Of a DNA stretch of 64,000 nucleotides, positions 49,808 through 64,000 are shown piece by piece. The translations under genes were made by a program, and so were the position numbers. The stretch is from positions 124,001 to 188,000 of IMG/VR virus record IMGVR_UViG_3300048121_001678, one strand, 5' to 3'. Under the pieces are notes generated by a model. The model saw only the letters and a list, made by a program, of their open reading frames with translations, did not search any database and was not told where the DNA came from. How positions within the stretch are numbered: position 1 is the stretch's first letter; each line of letters begins with the position of its first letter.

Positions 49808-50161
49808 TTAAATAATATTGATATATAAATTTTCTCTGATTGGGGTAATGAGTTCACCCATTGAATTAATTATCGAGAATTCACCCAAAAAACGACCTTT
49901 TCTTTTAGTGTCCCTCAATAACCACTTATAATATATGTAGTATGTGATTGGGGCGTTAGGGTTGTCTTGTGTTTTTTCAGTTATAAACGCATTGTTCATA
50001 ATAATCTTTGGAATGCCAGTCGACTCTTCTTTCATTGAAAAACGGATTGTTGCGTTGTCTAAATCAGCGTCGAACAATTTCCAAGAATCTGTTCGACCAT
50101 CTCTTACAACTTCCATCTTTAAGATTGGTAACTCACTGTTTTGTTTTATAAAGAATTCCAT
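49808..50161 (-). CDS. Small BppU-N-like adaptor domain protein
   Basis: MEFFIKQNSELPILKM...ATIRFSM...YKW...DT...G.F.GEF; paralogous to the N-terminus of 53640..58664. Confidence 0.6.
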   Translation of the reverse strand: MEFFIKQNSELPILKMEVVRDGRTDSWKLFDADLDNATIRFSMKEESTGIPKIIMNNAFITEKTQDNPNAPITYYIYYKWLLRDTKRKGRFLGEFSIINSMGELITPIRENLYINII

Positions 50162-50180
50162 AATTATAAATATATCAATA

Positions 50181-50208: not shown

Positions 50209-50231
50209 ATATTTTATAGGTTTTTAATTTA

Positions 50232-53200
50232 TTATAATGCCTGTGGTACAAAGTCGTAACTAATCGTTATATTGTTGTTACCAAGTGTGAACGACCTTGA
50301 AGCATTTCCAGGATTTATTCCACTATTTGCAGAAATCGATGATACACTTTGTCCTGTTACTGATGCGACACCTTGTGTTTCTCCGTATATCTGACATCCC
50401 GAACCTAACACACCTTGAGATTCAATGTAGAATAGGATTGTATCACCAGCTACCGCTTGGATTGAATCTGTTGAATCATTTCCACTACCAGTCGCTTGGT
50501 ATGAAGATTGTAACACTCCGTTCACATAAATAGAACCTGAACCTCTAGCACATGTCGCACTTGTGAAATTGAGATTAATTGTTCTCAGTGTTACCGAGGT
50601 TGACGGTGTTGGTGTTGGTGTCTTAGTTGGTGTACGTGTTGGTGTTGCCGACCTCGTTACTGAAGGTGTTGGTGTTGGTGAAGCAGGTGCCGGAGTACCT
50701 GTTGGTGTTCTCGTTGGTGTACTCGTTGGAGTCGGTGTTGGTAGTGCACAGAATGAACAAGTGTCCCCAACGGCAGTAATTGTATACGGCGGTGGTTCAG
50801 GGCTTTCATCAATAGCCACAATCTGCCAACAACCCGTTGTCTCTTTAACAGAACAGTAATCACCGATTGACGGTACTGATGAGAAACCAGAACCTAATAA
50901 TGCACTTGCTTGTGTTCCACCTGGTTGACAATTACCGTCAACGTAATTTATTGACTGTAATATGAATTTATATTCTACACATGGATGCTCTTGTAAACAT
51001 GATGTACATCCTTCATAGAACGAACCTCCTGGTGACCATATACCCTCTTGATTCCTAAATGTTCCGTCAATTATACCTAAATCGGTTACGTCGTCACCAC
51101 CATAGCTCTGTCCAATAAACTTAACACAAGTATCAAGAATACCTGTTTGTTCTTCTAAGTATAACGACACGTCACTACTCTCTTCGAGTGCGGATAAAAT
51201 GGAACCTGTCTGACTTTGATTTAAGGATATTCTATATACTAGTGCTGGTGTATTACAACATTCTGAGAAGTACATTGGGTAATATACCGTAGATGGTGTT
51301 ACTGATGGAGTAACAGACGGAGTAACACTAGTAGATGGTGTTATCGTTGGCTGTGGAGTTTGTGTTGCCTGTGGAGTATTAGATGGTGTAACCGTTTGTG
51401 TAGGTGCCGGTGTTTGTGTTGCCTGTGCCGTTGGAGTAACTGTTGAAGTTGCCGTAGGTTCAGGTGTTGATGTCGGAGCCGGTGTACCTGTTGGTTCAGG
51501 TGTTGACGTAGGTGCCGGTGTACCTGTTGGTTCAGGTGTTGACGTAGGAGTTACACTTGAAGTTTGAGTTGGTGTATTAGTCGGTGTTTCTGTAGGTGTT
51601 GGGGTTACACTTGCAGTTGGAGTTACACTCGCTGTTGGAGTAGGACTCGATGTTGGAGTATTAGTTGGTGTATATGTTGGCGACGGTGTCACTGAACTTG
51701 TAGGGGTTACAGACGATGTCGGTGTAACCGTTGATGTCGGAGTGTTACTTGGTGTTACTGTATTAGTAGGTGTTGGTGACTGAGTAGGTGTGTTTGTCGG
51801 TGTTCTTGATAGAGAAACCGTTGGAGTCACTGTACTTGTTGAAGTAACGGTTGGAGTAACTGTCGGTGTTACTGATGACGTTACTGAAGGCGTTGGTGTT
51901 ACTGAGGCAGTTACTGTTGCGGTAACTGTAGGTGTTACGGTCGATGTAGCCGTCGGTGTGAATGTTGACGTTGGTGTTACTGTCGATTGAGGGGTAACAG
52001 AAGGTGTTACTGAAGAACTTGGAGTTACTGTAGGTGTTACCGTTGATGTGTTTGTTGGTGTAACGGAAGGTGTTACTGAAATTGTTGGTGTAACTGTAGA
52101 TGTGTTTGTTGGTGTTATTGTTTGAGTAGGGTCAGGTGTTGAACTTACTCCTGGCGTTTGAGATACTGATGCAGTTATCGATGGTGTCGGTGTAACATCT
52201 GCGGTTGGAGTCACACTCGATGTTGGTGTAACTGGTGGTGTTGAAGTTTTAGTCGGCGTTGGTGTTGAAGTAGATGTTGATACAGGTGTTGCTGTTGTTG
52301 TTGGTGTTACTGTAGATGCTGGTGTTGATGTCGGTGCAGGTGTGGATGTTGTTGTTGGCGTAGAAGTACCACCTGGTGTTGACGTAGGTTGAGGTGTAGA
52401 TGTCGGTGCCGGTGTACCTGTTGGTTCAGGTGTTGTAGTTGCCTCAGGTGTGGATGTCGGTTCAGGTGTTGTAGTTGCCTCAGGTGTTGTAGTCGCCTCA
52501 GGAGTAACTGTAGACGCTGGTGTACCTGTTGGTGTTGGAGTAGCACTTGAACCTGGTGTATTTGATACTGAAACCGTTGGTGTTACAGTTGGTGACGGAG
52601 TTGCTGTCACTGATTGTGTTGGAGTGTTTGTAGGTGTAGACTCAGGAGTCAATGTAGGTTGTGCTGTCGAAGTAGGTGTTGGAGTCGATGTACCACCTGG
52701 TGTTTGTGTAGGGTTAGGTGTTAATGTAGCTTGTGGTGTTTGACTTACACTAGCCGTAACTGATGGTGTCGGAGTTGCCGTACCACCTGGTGTTTGTGTA
52801 GGAGTATTAGTTGGTGTTGCAGTTGCCGTGTTAGACGGTGTAACTGAACTACTTGGCGTATTTGTTGGGGTAACATCAGGTGTTGATGAAATGGTAGGGG
52901 TTGGTGTTGCACTTGCACCTGGAGTATCAGATACTGAAACTGAAGGTGTCGGTGTACTTGTTGTTGTTGATGTTGGAGTAGATACCGGTGTACCCGTTGG
53001 GGTTGGCGTCCCTGTAGACTGTGGAGTACTTGTTGGAGTTGCAGTTGTTGTAGAAGTTGGTGTTGAAACAGGTGTACCTGTTGGAGTTGCCGTCGTTGTC
53101 GATGTCGGTGTTGTTGTTGGTAACGGTGTACGAGTTGGAGTAGTCGTTGTGGTTGGCTCTGGTGTTGAAGTAACAGTAGCCGTAATAGTTGCTGTTGGCG

Positions 53201-53585
53201 TTGAAGTGGATTGTGGAGTACTTGTTGGTGTTCTTGTTGGAGAAACCGTTTGAGTAATCGTTGCCGTCATCGTAGGTGTTACCGTAGATGTTATCGTTGC
53301 AGTGATAGATGGTGTTACCGATGGTGTATTTGACGGGGTAATTGTTGGGGTAACTGTCTGTGTTTGTGTTGGGGTTGGTGTTGGATGACCAATTACATAA
53401 GTGTAAGATGCTTCGTATGTTTCAGAATAGATTGTGTAGGTACCGTAAAAATAATCAGTAACTAAATCAGCCGGCATAGTAACAACACCAAAGTCCGTTA
53501 CAGTCGAACCTGTATCCGCAGTAAAAGTAATGTGAACACTTTCACCTACTAAATTATCACTCAAAAATCTAATTCCATCTGCCAT
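50232..53585 (-). CDS. Mucin-like Thr/Pro/Ser-rich surface or fibre protein with Cys-rich and C-terminal beta domains
   Basis: About 700 aa of TPT/TVTP/TSTP repeats, a Cys-rich globular region, a second TP linker and a beta-rich tip; two TATTTATA copies upstream. Confidence 0.75.
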
Positions 53586-53639
53586 TGTGTATAAATACTT
53601 TAATATATTATTTTATAAATAGTTTATCTTATGAGAATA

Positions 53640-56600
53640 TTATGGGTAAGGTGTGGTAGTATTAAAGTTGTTTAATATTTGTGACGATGTTAACGCGGTA
53701 TTGTATAATCTAATAATACCGTACTCACCCCTAAAGTCACCAGTATTATCCGCACCTGGATTCTGTTGACCAAAGAAGATGTTATTATCAACACCACTTG
53801 ATAAGTATGATACCCCCGCTTCTGAGTCATTTAACACACCATTGATGTATAAACTTTGTGTACCACTTGAGAAATCCCAAACCAATACCACCTGATACCA
53901 CTGACCTTGATTAAATGGTGATGTTGAGTAAAGATAGTTATTCTGCCAAATCTTACCTCTAAATCTACCATCTTCAGCAGCTATTGGTGGCATGTTCCAT
54001 CCCGTTTGTGGGTTTGATTCCGACATTGACATAATGTTACCATTAGTATCATCGGGATTAATCCACAATTCATAAGTGAATGATTGAGTGGCGTTACCTG
54101 TACCCGCAACATTACTTAATAATATGTAATCGTCAATACCATCTGTGACTATAGACTTATCTGTGGAGTTATATGTTGGTCCATTAACTAAAGTACCATT
54201 ATAGTTACCTTGTAAATCCGTCCATAGAGTTCCGGTACCCAGATATGAATTTGAATTTCTGGCGTCTAAATAGACTAATAAATTAGATACTATTGGAGAT
54301 GTCCCTGATGGTGTTACTGTTTGTGTTGGCGTTATTGATGGAGTAACAGAAGATGTTACAGATGGTGTTGGAGTAGATGTCACCTGTGGTGTTTGTGTAG
54401 GTGTTGGTGTAGGCGTAATACAATCATCCGCAAAATAACCTGAAACCCCACCGTGGTTATCTTGGAAAATGTTTCTTAGTGTTACAAAACTTGGTTTAGT
54501 TAAAACTGGTGCGAAATAAGAATTAAATAAGTTATAACCTAAAATATTATTTGTTTGAATACCCGATGGAGTTCTCATATTATCATTCCACTCAGGAGAT
54601 AAAGAACCTCCCGCCCAAAACTCAGACATCTCCCACATACTCCAGTTAAGTAAATACATATACTCTTTATATGCTAATTGAGCCTGTTCTGTATCACCTG
54701 ACCAATTAGGTGCGTATTCACTAGGGTCAAACATACTATTGTCAATAGCTTGTTTCATAGCCAAATGTAAGTCAGTTGTTTGCCAATTCGGATTTTGTTC
54801 CGCCATCCAGTTTACTGCGGTTGACGAACCAGGAACCGCACCCATTATACCAAACAAGTGAACCGTATGGAAAATATGTTCAAATACTTCTCCAATCACA
54901 GTATCTCCACTTGTGGAGCCACTACTGTACCACACCATGTCATTAGTTGCGTGAGTATCTAAGAATTCTTGGTATCCTGTATACCCTGTTATACCTTCAT
55001 CGGTCAACCAATTAGGGTCATAGTCGTCCCCACTACCATAACCAACTCTTTGGGCTGTAGGTATTCCCTCATGTATTGTGCCTACATCACCTCTTAAAGT
55101 GGCTACTAAATTATTTTGATATGACAAAGTAATCCCTGTTGCTGATGGGTCCATTATTAATTGGAATGAACGGGCAACTTTTTTAGAGAATTCATCAGGT
55201 ACAGCAACATTACCACCAACCGCACCGGCTATAACTTCTAACATACCACTAACATTTATACTTCTATCGAATACTGCCCCATTACTGGTATCGGCAGTTA
55301 AAGGTCCTGCGACATAACAACTAAGAAGAGATGCTGCGGATGGGGTCGGTGTTGGAGTTACAGATGCTGTTGGTGTATATGTCGGAGTTGTTGTTGGTGT
55401 AGGTGTATTAGATGCAGTAACTGTAGGTGTTGGTGTTACGTATGGTAAAGGTGATAATGAATATCTCTGTCTGTATTGGTCATAGAATGATGTGATATCT
55501 GAATCAGATATTGCACTATCATATAATGCAACAATACCCATATCTCCATCAAAGAAGTCATCAGCAGCCCAGTTACTATCACCAATGTAATTATTATTTC
55601 TTGTAATTACGTTTGGTAACACACTTGTTAAACCAGATACCGAAGTCGTTTGATTAAACATCGTGTATGTTGAACCGTCAAGACGACCCACATAGAATCC
55701 CCAACCATTGTTTGTTATACCATTAGTAATTGTTTGTGTGAATGCTTGAGTGGCCCCTTGTCTAATCTCAAACCATAGATTATTAGTAGAGCCATTCCTA
55801 CCAAATATGATATTATCACTCTCATCTCCATTACCAAAGTCTATTATTCTCTCCCAATTAGATACCCCATTGAAATTAACAAAGGCTAATATTGTAATAC
55901 CATTACTAAAGTTGTCAAAGCCTGAAGGTACTTCACCATATTGAGATGTTCCGTCAAATGTTACAATACCACCATTAGATGATGACACTGTTGGAGAATT
56001 ATATAATGTGGCATCGTTTCCACCACCACTTGTATCTGTCCATGTTGATGATGTTGCATTCGCACCATCAAGTAATAATATTGGTGAACCTACAACCGAT
56101 GTAGGTGATGGTGTTGGTGTCAATGTAGGAGTTGGAGTGGCTGAATTAGCAAATGGTGTTGCGGTGAAGTCCATTGTCGGTGCTGGTGTATCAGTTGGAG
56201 TAACTGATTGAGTGACCGTAGGTGTTACCGTTGACTCAGGAGTGACTGAAGGAGTTACAGATTGTGTCAATGTTGGAGTTACCGTCGATGTCTTAGTGAC
56301 CGTAGGTGTGTTTGTCGGTGTATTAGATGGTGTTAATGTTTGAGTAACAGAAGCGGTTACTGTTTGTGTTGGGGTGTTTGTATTTGTTACAGTCGGAGTA
56401 ACAGTAGAGGTAACTGACGGAGTTACTGTATTTGTTGGAGTACTCGTTGGTGTTACACCCGGTGTTTCAGATGCGGTTACTGTTTGTGTTGGGGTGTTTG
56501 TATTGGTGACAGTTGGTGTTACTGTTGATGTCACTGACGGAGTTACTGTATTTGTTGGTGTGTTAGAAGGGGTTAATGTTTGAGTAACCGAAGGACTTAC

Positions 56601-58664
56601 TGTCTGTGTTGGCGTATTTGTTGGAGTAACCGTAGGTGTACTTGTTGAAGATGATGTTGGTGTTATGGTGTTTGTTGGTGTGATACTTGCAGTCACCGTT
56701 GGTGTAACCGTACTCGTAGGTGTCGATGTAGGACTTGATGGTGGAGTTACCGAAACTGAAATACTTGGGGTATTTGTTGGTGTGTGTGTTGGAGTAACTG
56801 TAGAAGTGACAGTCGGTGTTACTGACGAAGTAACCGATGGTGTTAATGTTGCAGTCGCAGATGGTGAAACCGTTTGAGTCGGAGTGTTTGTGTTCGTTAC
56901 TGTTGGTGTTACCGTTGAAGTAACCGAAGGTGTTACTGATTGTGTTGGTGTATTTGTTGGTGTCAATGAAGGCGTAACAGATGCCGTTACCGTTTGAGTC
57001 GGAGTATTAGTTGCCGTCACTGTTGGTGTAACAGATGAGGTAACCGAAGGAGTAACCGTCTGAGTTGGGGTGTTTGTCGGTGTTAATGTTGGGGTAATTG
57101 ATGCCGTAACTGTTTGAGTAGGTGTATTTGTGTTCGTCACTGTTGGTGTTACTGACGAAGTGACTGATGGCGTTAAACTTGGACTCACTGAAACCGAAGG
57201 TGTGATACTTACAGAAACCGTGGGTGTTGGAGTATTAGTTGCGGTTTTAGATATCGTAATTGTGGGGTTAGGTGTGTTAGTGGTAGAAGGTGTAACTGTC
57301 GGTAACGGAGTCGTCGATACAGAAGGTGTTAACGTATTTGTTGGCGTGGGCGTCGAAGACCCGATAGGTGTTGCGGTAACATCTGAAGTTGGTATAGGTG
57401 TAGATGTCATAGTAGGTGTTGCAGTACCAATAGGTGTTGCGGTAATATCAAAAGTGGGTATCGGAGTATCCGTAGGGTTTGGTGTATTTGTTGGTGTTGG
57501 GGTAACATCTATAGTTGGAGTAACTGTCGGTGTTGATGTATGACTAATACTTGGTGTGTTTGTTGGAGTTAATGTATTACTAACAATAGGTGTGTCAGTA
57601 GGGTTTGGTGTATTTGTTGCCGTTGGGGTAACATCTATAGTCGATGTAGGTGTAACAGTTGGGCTTTTACTAATAGTTGGTGTGTTTGTTGGAGTTAATG
57701 TATTACTAACAATAGGTGTGTCAGTAGGGTTTGGTGTATTTGTTGCCGTTGGGGTAACATCTATAGTTGGAGTAACTGTCGGTGTTGATGTATGACTAAT
57801 ACTTGGTGTCTGAGTAAGACTAACAGAAATGGAAGGTGTTACACCAATTGTTTTTGTAACTGTTGGTGTTGATGTGATTTGTAAAGTGGATGTGGGTGTG
57901 ATTGATGTTGTCGGAGTTACCGTTGGTGTTGGTGAAGGTGTAGATGTTGGTGTCGGAGTAATCGTAGTATCAAAGTTAGACTTTGGCTCAACCACAAACC
58001 TATATTTACCTGAAGAACTTATATTGTCAACTTTAATATCTTCATAGTAACTTTCACCAGTAATTAAATTATAATTGTATGGGCTTATAATTTTATATGT
58101 GGCATTTTTCTCACCCTTATTTATGGTTAATTTAACTTCATTAACTATTTGACGACCATCAACCATTAAAAGTACATTTTTAAAGGTGATATTCACTTCA
58201 GTATCCACAGGGTATGTTGCGTTGGCTGCGTAGTCAGAAATTACAGAGCCACTACTGTGTGTGTCAGTAAGTGATATTTGATTTGATATCTTATTTCTAC
58301 GACAACACATTTCAGAGTCGGCAAATGATTCCGCAACCGTAATAAATAAACTACTCTCTATCGGTACTCGGTATACTCCCCTTTCATTAGTTATTGTGAA
58401 AAAACCATTGTAACTACCGTTTTTATTAGTATTCTTTTTAGAGAATTGATAAGACAAGATGTAACCTGAATCATCTTTATTTGGTAATACTTGTGCTTTT
58501 GAATTTGCAATCTTATAAATACCTGTTTCGACATCCTGCATTGAAAAGGTAACAGTGGATGCATAGATAAGTGGGTCAAGTTGGTTGTAACCATTTCTTG
58601 ATTCATTTAGAACCTCAACTTGTAGTTTAGGTAACGTACTATTCTTTTTTATAAAAAACTCCAC
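53640..58664 (-). CDS. Mucin-like fibre protein: BppU-like anchor, Thr/Pro stalk, LamG domain, zincin-like domain, second LamG domain
   Basis: LLLDGAN...WTDTSGGGNDATL...FDGTSQY...WERIIDFGNG and LLVYLDARN...WTDL...TYELWINP...WYQVVLVWD...LYING are LamG/ConA-like; EVFEHIFHTVH...KEYMY lies between them. Confidence 0.75.
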   Translation of the reverse strand: MEFFIKKNSTLPKLQVEVLNESRNGYNQLDPLIYASTVTFSMQDVETGIYKIANSKAQVLPNKDDSGYILSYQFSKKNTNKNGSYNGFFTITNERGVYRVPIESSLFITVAESFADSEMCCRRNKISNQISLTDTHSSGSVISDYAANATYPVDTEVNITFKNVLLMVDGRQIVNEVKLTINKGEKNATYKIISPYNYNLITGESYYEDIKVDNISSSGKYRFVVEPKSNFDTTITPTPTSTPSPTPTVTPTTSITPTSTLQITSTPTVTKTIGVTPSISVSLTQTPSISHTSTPTVTPTIDVTPTATNTPNPTDTPIVSNTLTPTNTPTISKSPTVTPTSTIDVTPTATNTPNPTDTPIVSNTLTPTNTPSISHTSTPTVTPTIDVTPTPTNTPNPTDTPIPTFDITATPIGTATPTMTSTPIPTSDVTATPIGSSTPTPTNTLTPSVSTTPLPTVTPSTTNTPNPTITISKTATNTPTPTVSVSITPSVSVSPSLTPSVTSSVTPTVTNTNTPTQTVTASITPTLTPTNTPTQTVTPSVTSSVTPTVTATNTPTQTVTASVTPSLTPTNTPTQSVTPSVTSTVTPTVTNTNTPTQTVSPSATATLTPSVTSSVTPTVTSTVTPTHTPTNTPSISVSVTPPSSPTSTPTSTVTPTVTASITPTNTITPTSSSTSTPTVTPTNTPTQTVSPSVTQTLTPSNTPTNTVTPSVTSTVTPTVTNTNTPTQTVTASETPGVTPTSTPTNTVTPSVTSTVTPTVTNTNTPTQTVTASVTQTLTPSNTPTNTPTVTKTSTVTPTLTQSVTPSVTPESTVTPTVTQSVTPTDTPAPTMDFTATPFANSATPTPTLTPTPSPTSVVGSPILLLDGANATSSTWTDTSGGGNDATLYNSPTVSSSNGGIVTFDGTSQYGEVPSGFDNFSNGITILAFVNFNGVSNWERIIDFGNGDESDNIIFGRNGSTNNLWFEIRQGATQAFTQTITNGITNNGWGFYVGRLDGSTYTMFNQTTSVSGLTSVLPNVITRNNNYIGDSNWAADDFFDGDMGIVALYDSAISDSDITSFYDQYRQRYSLSPLPYVTPTPTVTASNTPTPTTTPTYTPTASVTPTPTPSAASLLSCYVAGPLTADTSNGAVFDRSINVSGMLEVIAGAVGGNVAVPDEFSKKVARSFQLIMDPSATGITLSYQNNLVATLRGDVGTIHEGIPTAQRVGYGSGDDYDPNWLTDEGITGYTGYQEFLDTHATNDMVWYSSGSTSGDTVIGEVFEHIFHTVHLFGIMGAVPGSSTAVNWMAEQNPNWQTTDLHLAMKQAIDNSMFDPSEYAPNWSGDTEQAQLAYKEYMYLLNWSMWEMSEFWAGGSLSPEWNDNMRTPSGIQTNNILGYNLFNSYFAPVLTKPSFVTLRNIFQDNHGGVSGYFADDCITPTPTPTQTPQVTSTPTPSVTSSVTPSITPTQTVTPSGTSPIVSNLLVYLDARNSNSYLGTGTLWTDLQGNYNGTLVNGPTYNSTDKSIVTDGIDDYILLSNVAGTGNATQSFTYELWINPDDTNGNIMSMSESNPQTGWNMPPIAAEDGRFRGKIWQNNYLYSTSPFNQGQWYQVVLVWDFSSGTQSLYINGVLNDSEAGVSYLSSGVDNNIFFGQQNPGADNTGDFRGEYGIIRLYNTALTSSQILNNFNTTTPYP
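57472..57809. repeat. Near-exact 126-bp tandem repeat (about 2.7 copies, 42 aa unit)
   Basis: About 90 nt starting ttggtgtgtttgttggagttaatg are identical at 57551 and 57677; the block at about 57472 recurs 252 nt later. Confidence 0.85.
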
Positions 58665-58683
58665 AGACTATAAATACATTTAA

Positions 58684-60717
58684 TTAATCATTAACTTCAA
58701 TACCAACATCACAGTTAGGATTGGAAACACTGAATCCTACACCACAATCAGTATCTACAACATCAAAACCAAATGCACAACCTTCATCGACAACATCAAA
58801 ACCAAAATTACATGACACATCATTCATAATGAAATCAAAATCACAAGCATTCAAATCAATGTTAAAATCGAAGAAACACTCCGATAATATTTCTAAACAA
58901 TTAGGACACCAAAAATCAAATAAATTATATGTGTCTCTTTCAACTCTAAAATTATGTTGTACCTGTGGTGAATTTAATGGTTCTGTGTAAAATCTCATTT
59001 TAGAAATCCCACCCATAAAAGTCCCACCAAAATTAGGTTCCATCTCAATATTAGTGACAAGTATTGGCTCATATGTTGTACCTGAAATCATTTCATTTGG
59101 CATACATTCAGGGTCTTGTATATATGGTCCGTTTATGTTAGTACAAGATGTTGGTATTAAACTCTCTCTTAAACCTTGTGTACCACCACCCCATGAAATC
59201 GTATATGGTACACCTATTTGTTTTTCTTTCTCAGTGTTTAATTCATGTGGTATAATTTCTTCAAAATCTTCAATAACCATAAACAAATATCCGTTTACGT
59301 ATAATTTTAAAGAACCACGCCTATCACTTACCTCATCCAACCATTTTTGAGTCCATTTAATGTTACCAACTTTTTCATCGTTAGCACCACTTGGACCTAT
59401 TAGTTTAACAGTGTCACCTGCAGTAGATGCCGTATATGTTTCGGTACGGATATCCCCTAATCCACCGACATTTAATAAATCACAATTTTCTAAGTACCTA
59501 TATCTTTCAAAAACGGCAGATAACATAACCCACCTTTCTTTAGTTTTTTCAGACTCGTTAATCGGGTATCCACAAACATCGTATATACCTGATGTCGAAC
59601 ATATCTCATTAATACAATACCCTGATGAGTATGTTGTCCCTGTATTTTCACATGTTCCTGTTGTAATACAACTACCAGTATATTTTATATATTTGACACA
59701 TAATTTAGGATTTTTTGGGTCACCACTTAATCGTAGTGAAACGGCATTTGATAATAAATCAAGTACGGGGTCAGACTCCTTATTAGGGTATATGGTGATA
59801 TTACCACAAGTTTTAAAACAACTAACTAATCCGGCGGTAACCCTTTTATAGTCTTCGACAGATGCACTACTAATCACTTCATTTGAACCACAGATAAACA
59901 AACCATTGTAAATTACAGGTATACCTGTGGCTTTATGGTAAAATTTATTTTCAGAGCGTGTACCAAGAAAAAAGAATGTACCAGAATTACCTGAATAAAC
60001 ATCATTAAGATATTCTTGACTATCACTTAATTCATATTCATCGTACTGTCGGGGTTTGATAAGTGTTTCCATTGACCATCCTTTGTTTACTCTCTCAGGA
60101 AAAATTTCATAGTCATAACCATGTAATTTATAAAATCCTTGAAAGAATCCACCATATAATTCTTGGTAGTAACCTACAGAACTATCTATTTTGTTAACAA
60201 TATTATAAACAGTTTCTTTTGTTTTACCCGTAAATCTTTGGTTTGGGTTTTTGGCAAATGTATTTACAGGGTGTAATTTCATTCTCCTATCGTGATATAG
60301 TGGGTCGTGAGTTTTACTTGGAAAAACACCCATAGAATAATATAATGTATTACCCGATATCTTATCAAACATACCTACATCAATCATTGTAAGACCTACA
60401 TCACAAATACCAGTGAATCCTGTATAACAAGATAAATCGACATTATTAGGGTTATAATAATTTAAAGATGTAAAAGTGTTCGCTGTATTTGCAACATTCC
60501 AGTAAAGGTTTGGTTTCGTAGTTGTACCCGATTGAGTTAAATCAAAATTAATTGGTAAACGATTACCATCATCATATGCAATGACTTTATCTGAAAAAAC
60601 AACTTCGCTGTCGTAGTCGCTCTCATCAGATGCCAAAGTAATATCAAAATACTCACTGGTATCCAACTTAACCTTAAATCTTTTGGAGTTATAACTATTA
60701 ATACTCTGACCTGCCAT
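58684..60717 (-). CDS. Cys-rich LamG-like structural protein with C-terminal 11-aa Cys repeats
   Basis: GWSMETLIKP, LKLYVNG, GGISKMRFYTEPL...VQHNF are dispersed LamG-like strands; C-terminal C-x-[FV]-x-[FI]-x-[VIM] repeats. Confidence 0.6.
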   Translation of the reverse strand: MAGQSINSYNSKRFKVKLDTSEYFDITLASDESDYDSEVVFSDKVIAYDDGNRLPINFDLTQSGTTTKPNLYWNVANTANTFTSLNYYNPNNVDLSCYTGFTGICDVGLTMIDVGMFDKISGNTLYYSMGVFPSKTHDPLYHDRRMKLHPVNTFAKNPNQRFTGKTKETVYNIVNKIDSSVGYYQELYGGFFQGFYKLHGYDYEIFPERVNKGWSMETLIKPRQYDEYELSDSQEYLNDVYSGNSGTFFFLGTRSENKFYHKATGIPVIYNGLFICGSNEVISSASVEDYKRVTAGLVSCFKTCGNITIYPNKESDPVLDLLSNAVSLRLSGDPKNPKLCVKYIKYTGSCITTGTCENTGTTYSSGYCINEICSTSGIYDVCGYPINESEKTKERWVMLSAVFERYRYLENCDLLNVGGLGDIRTETYTASTAGDTVKLIGPSGANDEKVGNIKWTQKWLDEVSDRRGSLKLYVNGYLFMVIEDFEEIIPHELNTEKEKQIGVPYTISWGGGTQGLRESLIPTSCTNINGPYIQDPECMPNEMISGTTYEPILVTNIEMEPNFGGTFMGGISKMRFYTEPLNSPQVQHNFRVERDTYNLFDFWCPNCLEILSECFFDFNIDLNACDFDFIMNDVSCNFGFDVVDEGCAFGFDVVDTDCGVGFSVSNPNCDVGIEVND

Positions 60718-60729
60718 TCCCTTTTTTAA

Positions 60730-60757
60730 GATAAATACTTTCTTTGTTGTATTTATA
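60730..60757. promoter_or_regulatory. Back-to-back divergent late-type motifs (TATTTATC minus, TATTTATA plus)
   Basis: One copy faces each of the divergent genes starting at 60717(-) and 60765(+). Confidence 0.7.
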
Positions 60758-60764
60758 GTTAAAA

Positions 60765-61469
60765 ATGAGTATGATAAAGCCCGATATCTTTAGAAAAGAA
60801 AAAGCTGCAGAAAAAAAGGCACTAGAAATAGGATGTAAAGGAACTCACAAACATGACAACGGTTTTATGCCTTGTGGGTCACACAAAGAGTTTGAGGAGG
60901 TGACTTCAAAAACAGAAGGTGAAATTGATGAATTAGTTGATTTTGATGGTACTATGAATAACTCAAAAATACCAATTATTGACCCACACGTATCACCAAA
61001 GAAAACTACTGACCAAACAGTCGCAGCTGCACGTACAAAACAAGACCCATATGCATTAGGGTTCAGAAGATATATAGGTGAGGAAGATATGTCCTCAGCA
61101 TTTGGATGGGAGGAGACAGAAGATATGAGTTTTGATGATACCATAGAGTATCTTGAAGACGAATTAGGGGTTGACAACGCAGAAGAAAGAGCTGAAGAAA
61201 TGGGTAAGGACCCAAAACTTGAAAAGAGAAAAGTAGATGGGGCATTTACGAGGATGAGACTTCAAGAAAAAGAAAAAATGTTCACTAAAGAACAAATAAT
61301 TAAAATGAAAGAAGATTTGTTAGTTGATAAAGGTAGTGATAACGATATCAGTATTTCTGATGATTCAATTTCAAAAATAATTATGAGAAATATTAAATCA
61401 CTTAAGAAATTGGCAGATAAAGAGGGTATAAGTGTAAAACAGTTATCAAGGTTAATGAGTAATGAATAG
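60765..61469 (+). CDS. Acidic hypothetical protein with an N-terminal Cys/His metal-binding motif
   Basis: ALEIGCKGTHKHDNGFMPCGSH. Confidence 0.65.
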   Translation: MSMIKPDIFRKEKAAEKKALEIGCKGTHKHDNGFMPCGSHKEFEEVTSKTEGEIDELVDFDGTMNNSKIPIIDPHVSPKKTTDQTVAAARTKQDPYALGFRRYIGEEDMSSAFGWEETEDMSFDDTIEYLEDELGVDNAEERAEEMGKDPKLEKRKVDGAFTRMRLQEKEKMFTKEQIIKMKEDLLVDKGSDNDISISDDSISKIIMRNIKSLKKLADKEGISVKQLSRLMSNE

Positions 61470-61917
61470 TAATTTATACGATAGAAAAGCAAAGTTACCT
61501 AAATCACTAATTAAGTATTTAGAAGAGTGCGGTGGTATGGTTGAGGCTGACTCAAACACAGAGGGGTTTAATAGAAATAAGGAACTCAGGGAATCGGGTG
61601 TGGTTAGTTATCAACAAATCAAAAGAATTAAGAATTTCTTTGATTCTTTTGATGGTAAGAAAGAAGACGCACCATTCGTATTAAACGGAGGTGATAGAAT
61701 GCAAAAATGGTGTGACCACGTATTAAACCATTGGAGGTCAGTAGAACAAGGTGGTAAAAAAAGAAAAGCCGATGGGGGAATGGAAAACCAATTCATAGAT
61801 AACCATGAAAAAAATGGTATAGTTATGAATCCACATGATAAACATGAAAAAGGTATTAATAAGTTTGATACAACCGTAAGAGAAAGTATCATTAAAAGAT
61901 TTAAAAGATTAACATAA
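61462..61917 (+). CDS. Hypothetical protein (possible head-morphogenesis domain)
   Basis: RNKEL...VSYQQIKRIKNFF...LNGG...KW; overlaps the upstream stop. Confidence 0.6.
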   Translation: MNSNLYDRKAKLPKSLIKYLEECGGMVEADSNTEGFNRNKELRESGVVSYQQIKRIKNFFDSFDGKKEDAPFVLNGGDRMQKWCDHVLNHWRSVEQGGKKRKADGGMENQFIDNHEKNGIVMNPHDKHEKGINKFDTTVRESIIKRFKRLT

Positions 61918-61918
61918 A

Positions 61919-62215
61919 ATGGCAGAACAAAACGACAGATTAGATTTCTCACAACCAAAAAACACTTTGAGTGAAATCGCAGAAAGAGAAAGAGCAAGAC
62001 TTTTTCCACGTAATGACTATTCACCTGTTTCAGACAAGTATTCAGCAGAGCACCCTGACGCACTTGCGGATGGTGATGATGAAGGTAGAGGTACCGGAGT
62101 ATTCTTAGACATCCATAACTTAGGTGGTGGAACAAGTACTGATATCAACGAAAGAAACGATGATATAAAAATTAATAAGTATAACTACAAAAACGGTTAT
62201 AAAGTAGAAGAATAA
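61919..62215 (+). CDS. Hypothetical protein
   Basis: Coupled ORF; YSAEHPDALADGDDEGRGTG. Confidence 0.65.
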   Translation: MAEQNDRLDFSQPKNTLSEIAERERARLFPRNDYSPVSDKYSAEHPDALADGDDEGRGTGVFLDIHNLGGGTSTDINERNDDIKINKYNYKNGYKVEE

Positions 62216-62610
62216 TGAATTTACAAGATACTCTAAGGTCAGTTCTTTTAGAAGTTGCATCAATGGACGATGTTCAAAATGCAATTAGAAAAAAACAGGT
62301 TGTCACTATTTTTTACGATGGTGATGAACCAGGTGGTCGTGGTTTAAGAACCATAGAACCCGTTTGTTTAGGGACCTCAAAATCGGGAAATAGAGTATTA
62401 AGAGCGTGGGACATGGAAGGTGCTTCCCACACTGCCAAAATAGGTGAACAACCCTTACCAGGATGGAGACTTTTTAGACTAGATAAGGTTATGACAATTA
62501 AACCTACAAATGATTACTTTACATCTCCTAGACCTGGCTATAACTTTAATGGTGATAAGAGTATGACTAACGTCATCATTAACGCACAATTTAATAATAA
62601 CGATGAATAA
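62215..62610 (+). CDS. Stand-alone WYL-domain protein
   Basis: AIRKKQVVTIFYDG...RTIEPVCLG...LRAW...WRLFRLDKV. Confidence 0.85.
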   Translation: MNLQDTLRSVLLEVASMDDVQNAIRKKQVVTIFYDGDEPGGRGLRTIEPVCLGTSKSGNRVLRAWDMEGASHTAKIGEQPLPGWRLFRLDKVMTIKPTNDYFTSPRPGYNFNGDKSMTNVIINAQFNNNDE

Positions 62611-63181
62611 CGACTTAATGCAAAAATTGGCAATGTCTAAAAAAATTATGGACGCCTCTGACAATATTAAACCAGGACAATCAGGTGCCGGATTACCTAT
62701 GACTGAAAATGTAAATGCGACATATAACATACCGCCAAATATGATTCAACAATCATCACCACAACAAATGTCTCAACCACAACCAGTGACTGAAGATAGA
62801 ATTCAAAACTCTAAATTACCTGATGAAATCAAACAATTAATGATGGAACACCCAATCCAACAACCAGGTTTTGGTGCAGGTGGACCAGTACTTTCTAATG
62901 ATATTATTGAAGGTGCTCAGAGATTAATGGGTAATAACCAAAAAAGTTCAGTTAACGAAACAAAAACAACAAATAGTGTTGCTACACCAAACTACGATTC
63001 GGACCTCAAACAAATGATTAGGGATGTTGTACGTGACACAGTAAGAGATGTTGTTAGAGAAGAACTACAAAACTCAGGAATGTTAACTGAGAGTGGTGTG
63101 AAAACAAATGAATCATTACAACTTAAAGTGGGTAAACACGTTTTTGAGGGAAAAGTTACTAAAATTAAAAAAGTAAAATAG
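62603..63181 (+). CDS. Hypothetical Q/P-rich protein
   Basis: Coupled ORF; NSKLPDEIKQLMMEHPI and IRDVVRDTVRDVVREEL...LTES. Confidence 0.65.
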   Translation: MNNDLMQKLAMSKKIMDASDNIKPGQSGAGLPMTENVNATYNIPPNMIQQSSPQQMSQPQPVTEDRIQNSKLPDEIKQLMMEHPIQQPGFGAGGPVLSNDIIEGAQRLMGNNQKSSVNETKTTNSVATPNYDSDLKQMIRDVVRDTVRDVVREELQNSGMLTESGVKTNESLQLKVGKHVFEGKVTKIKKVK

Positions 63182-63236
63182 TCACCCCCTTTTCTTATTA
63201 CTATTTTTATCTTATACTTTTTAATAAATTAAAAGT

Positions 63237-64000
63237 ATGTCAAAGATAAAAGTATTAGTTTTACCATCTGACCGTACAGGTGTTGGTAAATTCCGTTCAG
63301 TAGAACCCCATATATTCCTACAACAATCATATCCTGAAGATTTTCATGTCGATATTGACTATGAACCAAAACTCAACGATTTAGAGTATTGGAAGAACTA
63401 TGATATGGTGGTTTATCATCGCTCTATTGGTCGTAATCCGAGCCAATCGATAGAGATTATTAAGATGTTAAATAGTATGGGTATTGTTACCGTAATGGAT
63501 TTAGATGATTATTGGTTACCAACAAAAGACCACCCCGCACATAATATTGTAAAGCAAAATAAGATACATCTTTCGATTATTGAGAATTTAAAAGTTGCAC
63601 AACACGTCACAACAACAACTACAATTTTTGCAAATGAAATTAAAAAATACAATAAAAGTGTTTTTGTACTACCAAATGCAATTAACCCTAAAGAACCTCA
63701 ATTCATGGAGGAAACAAAACCATCAGACAAATTAAGATTTGGATGGTTAGGTGGGTCATCTCACTTGGAGGACCTAAAACTACTTAAAGGCTCATTCAAT
63801 AGATTAAAATCGGACAAAGATAAATTTAGGTTATTTTTATGTGGGTTTGACATTCGTGGAACTGTAACTGAAATTAACCAACAAACGGGAGAACAAAAAC
63901 AAAGACCTATCAAACCACATGAAACTGTGTGGTCTGAGTACGAAAATATATTCACAGAAAGAGGTTCATTAATCACACCTGAACATAAGGAGTTCTTATC
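63237..64000 (+). CDS. GT-B fold glycosyltransferase (GT4-like), truncated by the window edge
   Basis: Not in the track. MSKIKVLVLPSDRTGVGKFRSVEPH...VMDLDDYW...VTTTTTIFANEI...VLPNAI...RFGWLGGSSHLEDL. Confidence 0.8.
   Translation, partial: MSKIKVLVLPSDRTGVGKFRSVEPHIFLQQSYPEDFHVDIDYEPKLNDLEYWKNYDMVVYHRSIGRNPSQSIEIIKMLNSMGIVTVMDLDDYWLPTKDHPAHNIVKQNKIHLSIIENLKVAQHVTTTTTIFANEIKKYNKSVFVLPNAINPKEPQFMEETKPSDKLRFGWLGGSSHLEDLKLLKGSFNRLKSDKDKFRLFLCGFDIRGTVTEINQQTGEQKQRPIKPHETVWSEYENIFTERGSLITPEHKEFL

What the first reader, a model, noticed from the sequence alone, without database searches (positions are those of the whole stretch)
50232..64000. Mucin-like virion stalks plus a phage glycosyltransferase: possible viral glycocalyx
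Seen: two adjacent late-motif genes encode roughly 700 and 620 aa of almost pure T/P/S/V repeats carrying lectin-like (LamG), Cys-rich and zincin-like heads, and a GT-B glycosyltransferase begins at 63237. Known: Pro/Thr-rich linkers are typical O-glycosylation targets that become stiff and protease-resistant, and some phages glycosylate virion proteins with their own glycosyltransferases. Inference: long glycosylated bottle-brush filaments that extend capture range, penetrate capsule or mucus, or shield the particle.
Basis: inference. Interest (0 to 1): 0.72.

Follow-up and report, generated by a model that had tools for sequence, protein, structure and literature searches.

The report
Mucin-like phage fibres with sugar-adding genes
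A 297-kb freshwater-type jumbo phage spends about a tenth of its coding capacity on long threonine/proline "mucin-like" tail-fibre proteins, and it also encodes a relative of the enzymes that start mucin-type sugar coating in protists, so a self-made sugar coat on phage fibres is plausible but not yet shown.

Summary
P0001 (50232-53585, minus strand) carries a 720-aa Thr/Pro/Ser array and P0002 (53640-58664, minus strand) a 647-aa one. P0002 also has two LamG_3 domains, P0001 a Cys-rich head, and the gene at 63237 models as a GT-B glycosyltransferase. The "zincin-like" head is unsupported, and the upstream motif reads TATTTATA on the coding strand, not T4's TATAAATA.

The genome is a 297-kb jumbo myovirus resembling the published "moraphages". 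It has six such TP-rich proteins and two sugar-gene islands. One island starts at 63237 and runs about 13 kb past the window. The other lies beside a 2,499-aa TP protein and contains a PF11397/GT60-type polypeptide GlcNAc-transferase homologue (E 4e-68).

Three findings link the fibres to the sugar genes:
- In most related contigs the GT60 island sits inside the finding's own locus, between the P0003 homologue and PolB.
- 74 of 80 GT60 loci have TP-rich ORFs within 10 kb.
- P0002's N-terminal Ig-like domain is always N-terminal across its 150 best-scoring relatives (of about 770 clusters matched), and is usually followed by a TP linker.

Xanthomonas phage XacN1, which has a 47%-identical GT60 homologue, has Schiff-positive virion proteins. 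Glycosylation here is inferred, not shown. The GT at 63237 is not specifically tied to the TP genes. DNA glycosylation is unlikely.

The parts
50232..53585 (-). P0001, 1117 aa. It has a short N-terminal domain (1-53), a 720-aa PTS array (54-773), a Cys-rich head (774-926), a second TP linker (927-1014) and a C-terminal beta-rich domain (1015-1117).
   Evidence: The N-terminal domain is conserved in L010 (74% identity) and L028-30 (38%), and the Cys-rich head has a paralogue at genome 115681-116022. No signal-peptide-like or transmembrane segment was found.
53640..58664 (-). P0002, 1674 aa. It has an Ig-like anchor domain (1-~115), a second beta domain (~126-218), a 647-aa PTS array (219-865), LamG_3 (~866-1062), a TP linker, an unassigned 280-aa domain (1122-1404), a TP linker and a second LamG_3 (1462-1674).
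   Evidence: Searches give the sequence, domains and homologues. The anchor domain is modelled as a beta-sandwich (pLDDT 80-92 for residues 1-110). Its closest structures are BppU N-terminal and baseplate proteins. In all 150 best-scoring relatives of the family the domain is N-terminal. The second LamG domain is 34% identical to a Synechococcus phage S-PM2 'virion structural protein'.
58684..60717 (-). P0003, 677 aa. It is the conserved first gene of the block, probably ConA/LamG-like, with a C-terminal run of Cys-containing ~11-aa repeats. In many relatives it is extended by a TP linker and an extra domain.
   Evidence: One search gives the sequence. There are 23 related loci at 41-98% identity. 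In relatives the protein is 837-1420 aa with 63-367 TP residues. The Atlas gives a lead to Laminin_G_3 clusters.
49808..50161 (-). A 117-aa stand-alone paralogue of the P0002 anchor domain. It is conserved next to PolB in relatives.
   Evidence: 31% identity to P0002 residues 6-110; alignment A2; HMM E 5e-54.
63237..64000 (+). The first 254 codons of a 405-aa GT-B (GT4-like) glycosyltransferase. It is the first gene of sugar island B, which runs to about window coordinate 76200 (genome 187237-200184).
   Evidence: Searches cover the glycosyltransferase. The downstream genes are listed: a GT2+GT4+pyruvyl-transferase fusion (824 aa), a TylF-like methyltransferase, a DegT-like fragment, a PglD-like acetyltransferase, a GT-D-like protein, a UDP-glucose dehydrogenase-like protein, a GT1-like protein and a GT2.
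53590..53597 (-). Promoter-like motif TATTTATA, 5 nt upstream of the P0001 start. A second copy lies at 53614-53621.
58669..58676 (-). Promoter-like motif TATTTATA, 5 nt upstream of the P0002 GTG start.
60731..60737 (-). Promoter-like motif core TATTTAT, 13 nt upstream of the P0003 start.

Best explanation
P0003, P0002 and P0001 are late-expressed virion proteins of a jumbo myovirus, most likely attached at the tail or baseplate. They are built as 'beads on a string'. A small N-terminal Ig-like anchor holds the protein on the particle. Long Pro/Thr/Ser arrays act as extended spacers, and lectin-type (LamG/ConA-like) and Cys-rich heads bind ligands at a distance.

The PTS arrays are the probable acceptors of a phage-encoded, cytoplasmic, mucin-type O-glycosylation pathway. 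A GT60-type polypeptide alpha-GlcNAc-transferase homologue (genome 102103-103371) would place the first sugar on Thr/Ser, or possibly on hydroxyproline. A strain-variable set of glycosyltransferases would extend it, and methyl- and carbamoyl-transferases would decorate it. Sugar island B, which begins with the GT-B enzyme at 63237, would supply activated or modified sugars or further transfer steps.

The result would be stiff, protease-resistant, glycan-coated filaments. At about 0.25 nm per residue, the 647- and 720-aa arrays would span roughly 160-180 nm and the 2,029 TP residues of the largest paralogue about 500 nm. Such filaments would widen the capture radius and present a variable glycan and lectin surface.

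Shown here: the sequences, domains, enzyme families, synteny and co-occurrence. Inferred: virion location, glycosylation, acceptor identity and function.
For: The proteins are mucin-like in composition.
- P+T+S is 67-72% over the two arrays of 647 and 720 aa, with almost no charged or aromatic residues and 94-120 TP dipeptides each. The underlying repeats are degenerate, with periods that are multiples of 3.
- The genome holds six such proteins, 9.5% of its coding capacity.

The context points to the tail.
- The genome has a tail sheath and baseplate wedge subunits.
- TP cluster 2 lies between a 'minor tail protein' gene (phrog_13892, E 8e-44) and the baseplate wedge genes, on one strand.
- The TATTTATA motif is shared with the sheath gene.
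- The anchor domain's best structural matches are TP901-1 BppU N-terminus (4v96 Z 8.6, 3uh8 Z 7.7), the 80alpha baseplate (Z 8.6) and the NF5 baseplate (Z 8.1), plus a phiM12 'BppU N-terminal domain' protein in BFVD.
- The anchor family has 770 representative clusters. The domain starts at residue 1 (by residue 7 at the latest) in all 150 best hits. Of the 102 members of 180 aa or more, 85 carry TP-rich segments, usually directly after the anchor.
- The second LamG domain resembles an S-PM2 virion structural protein.
- None of the TP proteins or the sugar enzymes has a signal peptide or transmembrane segment.

The enzymes fit protein glycosylation.
- The GT60 homologue scores 230.9 bits against PF11397 (cut-off 21). 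DSH and HGEEISI are invariant across homologues 51-78% identical to it.
- GT60 enzymes start mucin-type O-glycosylation on Ser/Thr-rich domains in protists, and Gnt1 acts in the cytoplasm on hydroxyproline (PMC8724618, PMC6939170).
- Its neighbours are a NodU-like carbamoyltransferase and an FkbM methyltransferase + HtrL/YibB fusion, directly upstream of the 2,499-aa TP protein.

The enzymes and the TP genes are linked in relatives.
- 74 of 80 GT60 loci (72-92% identity) have TP ORFs within 10 kb, and 139 of 142 of these ORFs are on the same strand.
- The genes between GT60 and the HtrL-like gene vary from phage to phage: GT1, GT10, GT34, sugar O-methyltransferases and a DegT aminotransferase.
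- In relatives the island lies between the P0003 homologue and the anchor gene plus PolB, which is the finding's own locus. Within the flanks, PolB is present in 50 of 80 loci, an anchor ORF in 55 and P0003 in 34.
- In a separate lineage related to XacN1, about 10 of 18 loci have TP ORFs nearby. In the three most divergent loci a TP ORF lies immediately upstream of GT60.

There is experimental precedent.
- XacN1 ORF334 is 47% identical to the GT60 homologue and is followed by a carbamoyltransferase. XacN1 virions contain at least two Schiff-positive proteins (PMC5852040).

No phage-encoded lipid-carrier route was found.
- There is no Bac_transf hit and no Wzy_C/O-antigen-ligase hit.
Against: - There is no direct evidence for glycosylation, virion incorporation or expression timing.
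- The anchor-to-BppU match has Z values only slightly above generic Ig folds. Pfam, PHROGs and PDB sequence searches find nothing for the anchor, and it has no BLAST match in cultured phages. A head or neck location is therefore not excluded.
- The 80 GT60 loci are related to each other, so conserved synteny inflates the co-occurrence count.
- Stenotrophomonas phage RAS14 and about half of the XacN1-like loci keep the GT60 module with little or no nearby TP sequence. The enzyme's acceptor may therefore be something else.
- The Schiff-positive bands in XacN1 were not identified.
- Pro/Thr linkers can work as extended spacers without any sugar.
- The GT at 63237 sits in a run with an exonuclease, dUTPase, HAD phosphatase and PhoH. 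It is conserved in relatives that lack TP genes at this locus.
Confidence: 0.5

Rival explanations
1. The TP arrays are plain, unglycosylated extended linkers in virion fibres, like Pro/Thr linkers in bacterial cellulases. The two sugar islands serve another purpose, such as remodelling host LPS, capsule or other surface glycans during infection to block superinfection or aid release.
For: - Island B is organised like a polysaccharide-building locus: a UDP-glucose dehydrogenase-like gene, a DegT-like gene, a PglD-like acetyltransferase, a pyruvyl transferase and GT2/GT4 genes. It lies among early-type metabolic genes (dUTPase, PhoH).
- HtrL/YibB proteins are known from LPS-core gene clusters (plus family knowledge).
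- GT405 is conserved whether or not TP genes are present at the locus.
- Some GT60-bearing phages have almost no TP sequence nearby.
Against: - The only activities reported for GT60 enzymes are on polypeptide acceptors.
- Island A is embedded in the tail and fibre gene block, on the same strand.
- The phage encodes no priming phosphoglycosyl transferase and no Wzy or ligase.
- XacN1 virions do contain glycoproteins.
Confidence: 0.3
2. The glycosyltransferase at 63237, and perhaps others, glycosylates phage DNA to evade restriction, as the T4 alpha- and beta-glucosyltransferases do.
For: - T4's DNA glucosyltransferases also have the GT-B fold.
- The neighbouring genes are an exonuclease, dUTPase and HAD phosphatase.
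- The 796-aa island-A protein has a weak TET-associated glycosyltransferase hit (E 0.0011, below cut-off).
- The genome has three 2OG-Fe(II) oxygenases.
Against: - The only ThyA-family gene passes the thymidylate-synthase equivalog cut-offs (345.5 bits against 108), so no dCMP or dUMP hydroxymethylase is evident.
- The dUTPase is canonical.
- There is no Tet_JBP hit, although this search had no positive control.
- The top structural matches are GT4 enzymes, not DNA glucosyltransferases.
Confidence: 0.07
3. The TP-rich proteins are not virion parts. They would be phage-encoded adhesins or decoys that are released at lysis or displayed by the infected cell.
For: - No virion proteomics exists for this lineage.
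- Two proteins of this gene block, the 1884-aa TP protein and a neighbouring 461-aa non-TP protein, carry SprB repeats, and the 1884-aa protein also a DUF642 domain, both typical of bacterial surface proteins.
Against: - The proteins have no signal peptide or membrane anchor.
- The genes lie between tail and baseplate genes and share an upstream motif with the sheath gene.
- The architecture has a constant N-terminal adaptor and a variable C-terminus, which is typical of phage fibres.
- The LamG domain has a homologue in an S-PM2 virion protein.
Confidence: 0.08

Closest known systems
Mycobacteriophage virion glycosylation (Freeman et al. 2023, cited in PMC12619734)
   Same: Phage-encoded glycosyltransferases lie next to structural genes. 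O-glycans are placed on Ser/Thr-rich stretches of virion proteins in the cytoplasm, and the coat acts as a shield.
   Different: In mycobacteriophages short C-terminal tails of the capsid and tail-tube subunits are modified. Here the candidate acceptors are arrays of hundreds to 2,000 residues in fibre-like proteins, the candidate initiating enzyme is GT60-type, and nothing has been shown experimentally.
Xanthomonas jumbo phage XacN1 (also Xoo-sp13 and Stenotrophomonas phages CM1 and RAS14)
   Same: These phages carry a 45-48% identical GT60-like gene followed by a carbamoyltransferase and a ~545-aa gene. Giant baseplate-adjacent proteins with Pro/Thr linkers lie nearby. XacN1 virions have Schiff-positive proteins.
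   Different: The lineage and hosts are different (Gammaproteobacteria). There is far less TP sequence: 62-279 residues per protein in the regions examined. The glycoproteins were never identified or tied to ORF334.
GT60 polypeptide alpha-GlcNAc-transferases of protists (Dictyostelium, Trypanosoma cruzi) and cytoplasmic Gnt1 of the Skp1 pathway
   Same: Same Pfam family PF11397, with conserved DxH and Gal/GalNAc-T-like motifs. The protist enzymes start mucin-type O-glycosylation on Thr/Ser-rich domains, and Gnt1 works in the cytoplasm.
   Different: The protist mucin enzymes are Golgi membrane proteins, whereas the phage protein has no membrane segment. Its donor, acceptor and linkage are untested. 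Whether one of the phage's three 2OG-Fe(II) oxygenases supplies hydroxyproline is unknown.
Glycosylated fibrils of Mimivirus and the chlorovirus PBCV-1 capsid glycans (from my own knowledge; PBCV-1 is also cited in PMC5852040)
   Same: In both, a virus-encoded, host-independent glycosylation machinery decorates surface structures. It includes aminosugar synthesis, acetyl-, methyl- and pyruvyl-transferases.
   Different: Those are eukaryotic giant viruses with different carrier proteins. No homology of carriers or enzymes was tested here.
TP901-1 BppU and other baseplate proteins with a BppU_N Ig-like adaptor
   Same: A small N-terminal Ig-like domain is followed by variable distal modules, and the folds match best (Z 7.7-8.6).
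   Different: There is no sequence-level match to Pfam BppU_N, the Z values are close to generic Ig matches, and the host phage is a myovirus.
'Moraphages' (Perez-Hernandez et al. 2025, PMC12619734)
   Same: These are aquatic jumbo phages of 200-307 kb. The paper reports four putative glycosyltransferase orthologous groups among its core groups, an Hc1 histone-like protein and, in some members, glutamine synthetase. Predicted hosts are Bacteroidota. This genome has the Hc1 and glutamine-synthetase-like genes and the right size.
   Different: Membership was not tested by phylogeny. The terms threonine, fibre and LamG do not occur in the paper's main text, and it offers only generic roles for the glycosyltransferases.

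Membership tests
Mucin-like (PTS) domain | Long region dominated by Pro, Thr and Ser, built from tandem repeats | tested here: met
   P+T+S is 72% over 720 aa and 67% over 647 aa. The tandem repeats are degenerate, with periods 18-126 nt.
Mucin-like (PTS) domain | Dense O-glycosylation of the array | not testable with these tools
   This needs glycoproteomics or staining of purified virions.
GT60 / Pfam PF11397 polypeptide GlcNAc-transferase (genome 102103-103371) | Score above the curated family threshold over most of the model | tested here: met
   230.9 bits against a cut-off of 21, E 4e-68, model positions 96-350 of 352.
GT60 / Pfam PF11397 polypeptide GlcNAc-transferase (genome 102103-103371) | GT-A metal-binding DxH motif and Gal/GalNAc-T-like motif conserved (motif identities are from my own knowledge of GT27/GT60) | tested here: met
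   D97-S98-H99 and H207-G-E-E-I-S-I are invariant in six phage homologues 51-78% identical to the query.
GT60 / Pfam PF11397 polypeptide GlcNAc-transferase (genome 102103-103371) | Transfers GlcNAc from UDP-GlcNAc to Thr, Ser or Hyp of a polypeptide | not testable with these tools
   This needs an enzyme assay.
GT-B glycosyltransferase (gene at 63237) | Two Rossmann-like domains of the GT-B fold | tested here: met
   The AlphaFold model (pTM 0.65) matches GT4 enzymes at Foldseek E 7e-8 and TM 0.45-0.5. The C-terminal domain is modelled poorly, with pLDDT below 50 for residues 277-356.
GT-B glycosyltransferase (gene at 63237) | Sequence membership in a curated GT family (Glycos_transf_1 or Glyco_transf_4) | tested here: not met
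   No Pfam or NCBIfam hit. The only hit is phrog_7162.
Laminin_G_3 / ConA-like lectin domain | Pfam PF13385 match above threshold | tested here: met
   P0002 scores 123.5 bits against a cut-off of 27.6, in two stretches. P0003 has only an Atlas lead.
Zincin metalloprotease | HExxH (or inverted HxxEH) zinc-binding motif | tested here: not met
   No such motif occurs in P0001, P0002 or P0003, and there is no family hit.
BppU_N-type baseplate adaptor domain | Sequence match to Pfam BppU_N | tested here: not met
   No Pfam hit at E <= 0.01 for P0002 or the 117-aa paralogue.
BppU_N-type baseplate adaptor domain | Ig-like fold closest to BppU N-terminus, placed at the N-terminus of proteins with variable distal parts | tested here: inconclusive
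   The top VIA-align hits are BppU and baseplate chains (Z 7.7-8.6), but generic Ig domains score 7-8. The N-terminal position holds in all 150 best-scoring relatives.
T4-type late promoter | TATAAATA on the coding strand upstream of late genes | tested here: not met
   Upstream of P0001, P0002 and P0003 the coding strand reads TATTTATA or TATTTAT. Genome-wide, 46 genes have TATTTATA upstream against 18 with TATAAATA.
Moraphage lineage (PMC12619734) | 200-307 kb aquatic jumbo phage with an Hc1-like histone, several core glycosyltransferases and often glutamine synthetase | tested here: met
   The genome is 297 kb. Hc1 hits at E 7e-19 and a glutamine-synthetase-like gene at E 7e-16. Two glycosyltransferase islands are present.
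Moraphage lineage (PMC12619734) | Placement inside the clade in TerL, MCP and PolB trees | not tested
   The published genomes were not available to the tools.
DNA-glycosylating phage system | A source of hydroxymethyl-pyrimidine (dCMP or dUMP hydroxymethylase, or Tet/JBP) | tested here: not met
   The only ThyA homologue is a thymidylate-synthase equivalog. There is no Tet_JBP hit, though that search had no positive control.

The most novel reading that the evidence does not exclude
A widespread lineage of freshwater jumbo phages (at least 529 IMG/VR contigs carry the enzyme) runs its own complete, cytoplasmic, mucin-type O-glycosylation system. A GT60 polypeptide GlcNAc-transferase, a family whose characterised members are all from protists, would start glycans on fibre proteins with arrays of hundreds to thousands of Pro/Thr/Ser residues. 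A strain-variable cassette of glycosyltransferases, methyltransferases and carbamoyltransferases sits in the same hypervariable locus as the fibre genes and would diversify the glycan. Each phage strain would then display its own 'glycocalyx' on lectin-tipped filaments 0.15-0.5 micrometres long.
Probability: 0.35. Interest if true: 0.85.

Novelty: new variant of a known kind. Interest (0 to 1): 0.68.

Why it matters
Glycosylation of phage particles has been demonstrated in very few cases. If these fibres are sugar-coated by the phage's own enzymes, several things follow:

- Bacterial viruses would have a mucin-like surface layer with a strain-variable glycan, made without any secretory pathway.
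- A eukaryote-type initiating enzyme family (GT60) would be tied to phages.
- The function of core glycosyltransferases in a newly described, abundant group of aquatic jumbo phages would be explained.
- The coat would bear on how large phages find hosts on particles or in polysaccharide matrices, and on how they resist proteases and grazing.
- The enzymes could be used for cytoplasmic O-glycosylation of designed Pro/Thr-rich carriers in bacteria.

The hypothesis is directly testable. A cultured phage (XacN1) carries the homologous module, and the enzyme and acceptor peptides can be made recombinantly.

Tried and rejected
- blastn of window 58684-64000 against cultured phages found no match.
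- PDB sequence searches of the P0002 anchor, the P0002 middle domain, GT405 and the GT60 homologue found nothing meaningful.
- Foldseek of the anchor model against PDB returned mostly antibodies and generic Ig domains. VIA-align and BFVD were more informative.
- tblastn of the anchor domain against cultured phages found no match.
- Atlas search of the P0002 middle domain returned only unnamed clusters, plus a sub-threshold metallopeptidase lead at score 0.84. I rejected this as support for 'zincin'.
- HSP70, a moraphage trait in some members, is absent.
- ThyX is absent. Tet_JBP gave no hit, but that search had no positive control.
- The weak TAGT hit in the 796-aa protein (19.4 bits against a cut-off of 27.5) and the weak intein/Hint hits in the 2,499-aa protein (17.9 bits against 35.8) are below threshold. 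I treat both as leads only.
- The three 2OG-Fe(II) oxygenases could not be assigned as prolyl hydroxylases.
- phrog_15511 hits fall on the TP linkers themselves, so I disregarded them as compositional.
- I did not run a complex prediction of a glycosyltransferase with a disordered array. No read mapping was attempted either.
- A single-genome co-location statistic was not convincing. About 27% of the genome lies within 10 kb of a TP gene, so two islands landing there has a chance probability of about 0.08.

Full report
**What is in the window**

The stretch 50232-60717 holds three co-directional minus-strand genes.
- P0001 (50232-53585, 1117 aa) has a 53-residue N-terminal domain and a 720-residue array of Thr/Pro/Ser/Val (residues 54-773). 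These are followed by a Cys-rich domain (774-926, 9 Cys), an 88-residue TP linker and a small C-terminal domain.
- P0002 (53640-58664, 1674 aa, GTG start) has two N-terminal beta domains (1-218) and a 647-residue array (219-865). It then has a LamG_3 domain, a TP linker, an unassigned ~280-residue domain, another TP linker and a second LamG_3 domain.
- P0003 (58684-60717, 677 aa) has no family hit. It is probably ConA/LamG-like (Atlas lead) and ends in Cys-containing ~11-residue repeats.

The arrays are 67-72% P+T+S and have almost no charged or aromatic residues. T+P content of P0001 and P0002 is 31-45%, against 9.6 +/- 2.9% in the rest of the proteome. At the DNA level the arrays are degenerate in-frame repeats with periods of 18-126 nt.

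The ORF at 63237 runs past the window to 405 aa. Its AlphaFold model is of medium quality (pLDDT 67.5), with a GT-B fold closest to GT4 enzymes.

No zincin motif exists. The upstream motif reads TATTTATA on the coding strand, not T4's TATAAATA. It is nonetheless a real signal: it lies within 50 nt upstream of 46 of 313 genes, 18-fold over expectation.

**The genome**

The window is bases 124001-188000 of a 297,164-bp IMG/VR virus record, 99% complete by CheckV, 34% G+C.
- It is a myovirus. It has a 1060-aa tail sheath, baseplate wedge subunits, a minor tail protein, PolB, DnaB, ribonucleotide reductase and a UvsX-like recombinase.
- The sheath is only about 30% identical to the nearest records, an uncultured 484-kb phage and Microcystis phage Mel-JY01.
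- Size, an Hc1 histone-like gene, a glutamine-synthetase-like gene and multiple glycosyltransferases match the 'moraphages' described in 2025. These are freshwater jumbo phages with predicted Bacteroidota hosts (PMC12619734). Membership was not tested by phylogeny.

**The finding is part of a larger pattern**

The genome has six TP-rich proteins, 8,774 aa in total and 9.5% of coding capacity.
- They include a 2,499-aa protein with 2,029 TP-rich residues (genome 89222-96721) and an 1,884-aa protein with SprB repeats and DUF642.
- Glycosyltransferase genes found here (GT1/GT2 scans of the whole genome plus annotation of these blocks) lie in two islands, each next to a TP cluster.

Island B starts with the gene at 63237. 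After an exonuclease, a dUTPase and a HAD phosphatase it continues with these genes:
- an 824-aa GT2 + GT4 + polysaccharide-pyruvyl-transferase fusion
- a TylF-like methyltransferase
- a truncated DegT-like protein
- a PglD-like acetyltransferase
- a GT-D-like protein
- a UDP-glucose dehydrogenase-like protein
- PhoH
- a GT1-like protein and a GT2

Island A (genome 96768-103371) sits in the tail-gene block, directly upstream of the 2,499-aa TP protein and on the same strand. It encodes:
- a 422-aa PF11397 'Glycosyltransferase (GlcNAc)' protein (230.9 bits, E 4e-68)
- a NodU-like carbamoyltransferase
- two small proteins
- a 796-aa FkbM-methyltransferase + HtrL/YibB fusion

**Why the PF11397 protein matters**

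PF11397 corresponds to CAZy family GT60. Its characterised members are polypeptide alpha-GlcNAc-transferases that initiate mucin-type O-glycosylation on Ser/Thr-rich domains in Dictyostelium and Trypanosoma cruzi. The family also includes the cytoplasmic Gnt1, which glycosylates hydroxyproline of Skp1 (PMC8724618, PMC6939170).

The phage protein keeps an invariant D-S-H and an H-G-E-E-I-S-I block across homologues 51-78% identical to it. From my own knowledge these correspond to the DxH metal site and the Gal/GalNAc-T motif of the GT27/GT60 enzymes. It has no membrane segment, as expected for an enzyme acting on virion proteins in the cytoplasm.

The genome encodes no priming phosphoglycosyl transferase and no Wzy or O-antigen-ligase family protein. 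Three 2OG-Fe(II) oxygenases are present. They leave a hydroxyproline route open but could not be assigned.

**Comparative evidence linking enzymes and fibres**

Relatives of P0003:
- There are 23 related IMG/VR loci at 41-98% identity. The frame GT405 - four small genes - P0003 - [variable] - 117-aa gene - PolB is conserved in most of them, while the [variable] slot changes from phage to phage.
- P0002/P0001-like genes occupy the slot in L008 and L010.
- Other TP-rich proteins occupy it in L011, L025 and L028-30.
- In L013-L027 a TP linker is fused to P0003.
- L009 and L012 have no TP gene there, only a 125-aa stand-alone homologue of the P0002 N-terminus.

Relatives of the GT60 protein:
- It has at least 529 relatives in IMG/VR. 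Among the best 80 loci, 74 have TP-rich ORFs within 10 kb, and 139 of 142 such ORFs lie on the GT60 strand.
- Between GT60 and a conserved ~556-aa HtrL-like gene lies a variable set of sugar genes: GT1, GT10 fucosyltransferase-like, GT34, FkbM and rhamnosyl-O-methyltransferase-like proteins, and a full-length DegT aminotransferase.
- In most of these relatives the island lies in the finding's own locus. In L046 the order is GT405 ... P0003 homologue (1305 aa, 367 TP residues) - GT60 - three small genes - HtrL-like - 133-aa anchor protein - PolB.
- Within the flanks, PolB is present in 50 of 80 loci, an anchor-domain ORF in 55, P0003 in 34 and GT405 in 23.
- In the genome studied here the island has been moved about 70 kb away, and P0002/P0001 fill the slot.

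The slot between P0003 and PolB is therefore a hypervariable cassette. It holds TP-fibre genes, the glycan island, or both.

These loci are related to each other, so the counts are not independent. A second lineage was therefore sampled with XacN1's protein as query. About 10 of 18 loci have TP ORFs nearby. In the three most divergent loci (35-37% identity to XacN1's protein, one with 59% G+C) a TP ORF lies immediately upstream of GT60.

**Where the proteins sit**

P0002's first ~115 residues fold as an Ig-like sandwich (pLDDT 80-92).
- In an exhaustive alignment against 48,161 PDB chains, the first, second, fourth and ninth matches are the 80alpha baseplate, TP901-1 BppU, the NF5 baseplate and the isolated BppU N-terminal domain (Z 7.7-8.6). 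Generic Ig domains follow closely behind.
- BFVD hits include a 'BppU N-terminal domain' protein and tail or tail-fibre proteins.
- A profile of this domain finds 770 representative clusters. In all 150 best hits the domain begins at residue 1 (by residue 7 at the latest), in proteins of 95-1632 aa. Of these, 48 are stand-alone. Of the 102 longer ones, 85 carry TP-rich segments, usually straight after the domain.

This is the signature of a constant adaptor carrying exchangeable distal modules on a TP string.
- Mosaicism is visible. The middle domain of P0002 is 97.6% identical in L010, while its anchor is only 67% identical.
- The second LamG domain is 34% identical to an annotated virion structural protein of Synechococcus phage S-PM2.
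- No TP protein has a signal peptide.

I therefore place them on the particle, most likely at the baseplate. A head or neck position is not excluded.

**Experimental precedent**

The only cultured phages with a GT60 homologue (45-48% identity) are the jumbo phages XacN1, Xoo-sp13, CM1 and RAS14.
- In XacN1 and RAS14 the gene is followed by a carbamoyltransferase and a ~545-aa gene. It lies near a >3,000-aa baseplate-adjacent protein with Pro/Thr stretches.
- The XacN1 paper reports at least two Schiff-stained glycoproteins in purified virions and suggests the phage's own glycosyltransferases make them (PMC5852040).
- The bands were not identified.

**The rivals**

- DNA glycosylation is unlikely. 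The single ThyA homologue is a thymidylate-synthase equivalog, the dUTPase is canonical, and no Tet/JBP domain was found.
- GT405's cultured-phage homologues (27% identity) sit in the uncharacterised four-glycosyltransferase cluster of phi92-like phages, which does not settle its acceptor.
- Unglycosylated TP spacers would also work mechanically.

**Verdict**

The 'viral glycocalyx' reading is plausible and now rests on specific, testable evidence:
- a GT60 initiating enzyme
- a hypervariable fibre-plus-glycan cassette
- an N-terminal adaptor family with TP strings
- glycoproteins in XacN1 virions

It remains inference. I put about 0.5 on glycosylated virion fibres, about 0.8 on virion fibres as such, and about 0.25 on the gene at 63237 acting directly on them.

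Noticed in passing
window 53590-53597, 58669-58676, 50165-50172, 40155-40162 and genome-wide: The motif TATTTATA lies 4-33 nt upstream of start codons on the coding strand. It is found before 46 of 313 genes, 18-fold over expectation, and 75 genes have the core TATTTAT. It precedes the sheath gene, large structural genes and five of the six TP genes, but also DnaB and a UvsX-like gene. It is the reverse complement of the T4 late-promoter box.
   Followed up: partly
L002:15750-16721 (-) = genome 95750-96721: The N-terminus of the 2,499-aa TP protein looks like a Hint/intein-type autoprocessing domain that ends in ...YIVHN. The Pfam hits to Intein_splicing and Hom_end_hint are weak and below threshold (E 0.003 and 0.02). 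It could mean self-cleavage or covalent attachment.
   Followed up: partly
window 54441-55313 (P0002 residues 1118-1408) versus L010:14630-15502: The unassigned middle domain is 97.6% identical in a relative whose anchor domain is only 67% identical and whose P0003 is 73% identical. This indicates recent exchange of head modules between phages.
   Followed up: no
window 58687-58908 (P0003 residues ~604-677): The C-terminus is a run of five or six ~11-residue repeats, each with one Cys (pattern C-x-F-G-F-D-V-V-D). Its function is unknown.
   Followed up: no
L006:8807-9451 (genome 193807-194451): The DegT/PseC-like aminotransferase in island B is only 214 aa and matches just positions 23-88 of the 360-position model, so it is probably a remnant. 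A relative (L055:7771-8865) has a full-length DegT in island A.
   Followed up: no
genome 61247-61414 and 45482-46612 (outside the window): An Hc1 histone H1-like gene (E 7e-19) and a glutamine-synthetase-like gene are present. Both are traits reported for the recently named 'moraphages'.
   Followed up: partly
L134 (phage phi92, record 102200-105376): The cultured-phage homologues of the 63237 glycosyltransferase lie in a conserved run of four glycosyltransferase genes in phi92-like phages. One is annotated as having a polypeptide GalNAc-transferase fold. The function of the cluster is apparently unknown.
   Followed up: no
window 36940-40122: The tail sheath protein is unusually long at 1060 aa. 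The model positions of phrog_23 are spread over the whole length, which implies large inserted domains.
   Followed up: no
window 50000-58000: G+C rises to 43% and GC skew to +0.34 to +0.47 over the TP arrays, against 31-37% G+C and negative skew in most other 2-kb bins of the window, because of the ACN and CCN codons on the minus strand. The same bias creates spurious GTG-start ORFs of 97-141 aa on the plus strand.
   Followed up: yes
genome 84884-86269 and 115276-120930 (outside the window): SprB repeats, the repeat unit of the Flavobacterium gliding adhesin, occur in two structural-block proteins. This fits the Bacteroidota host predicted for moraphages.
   Followed up: no
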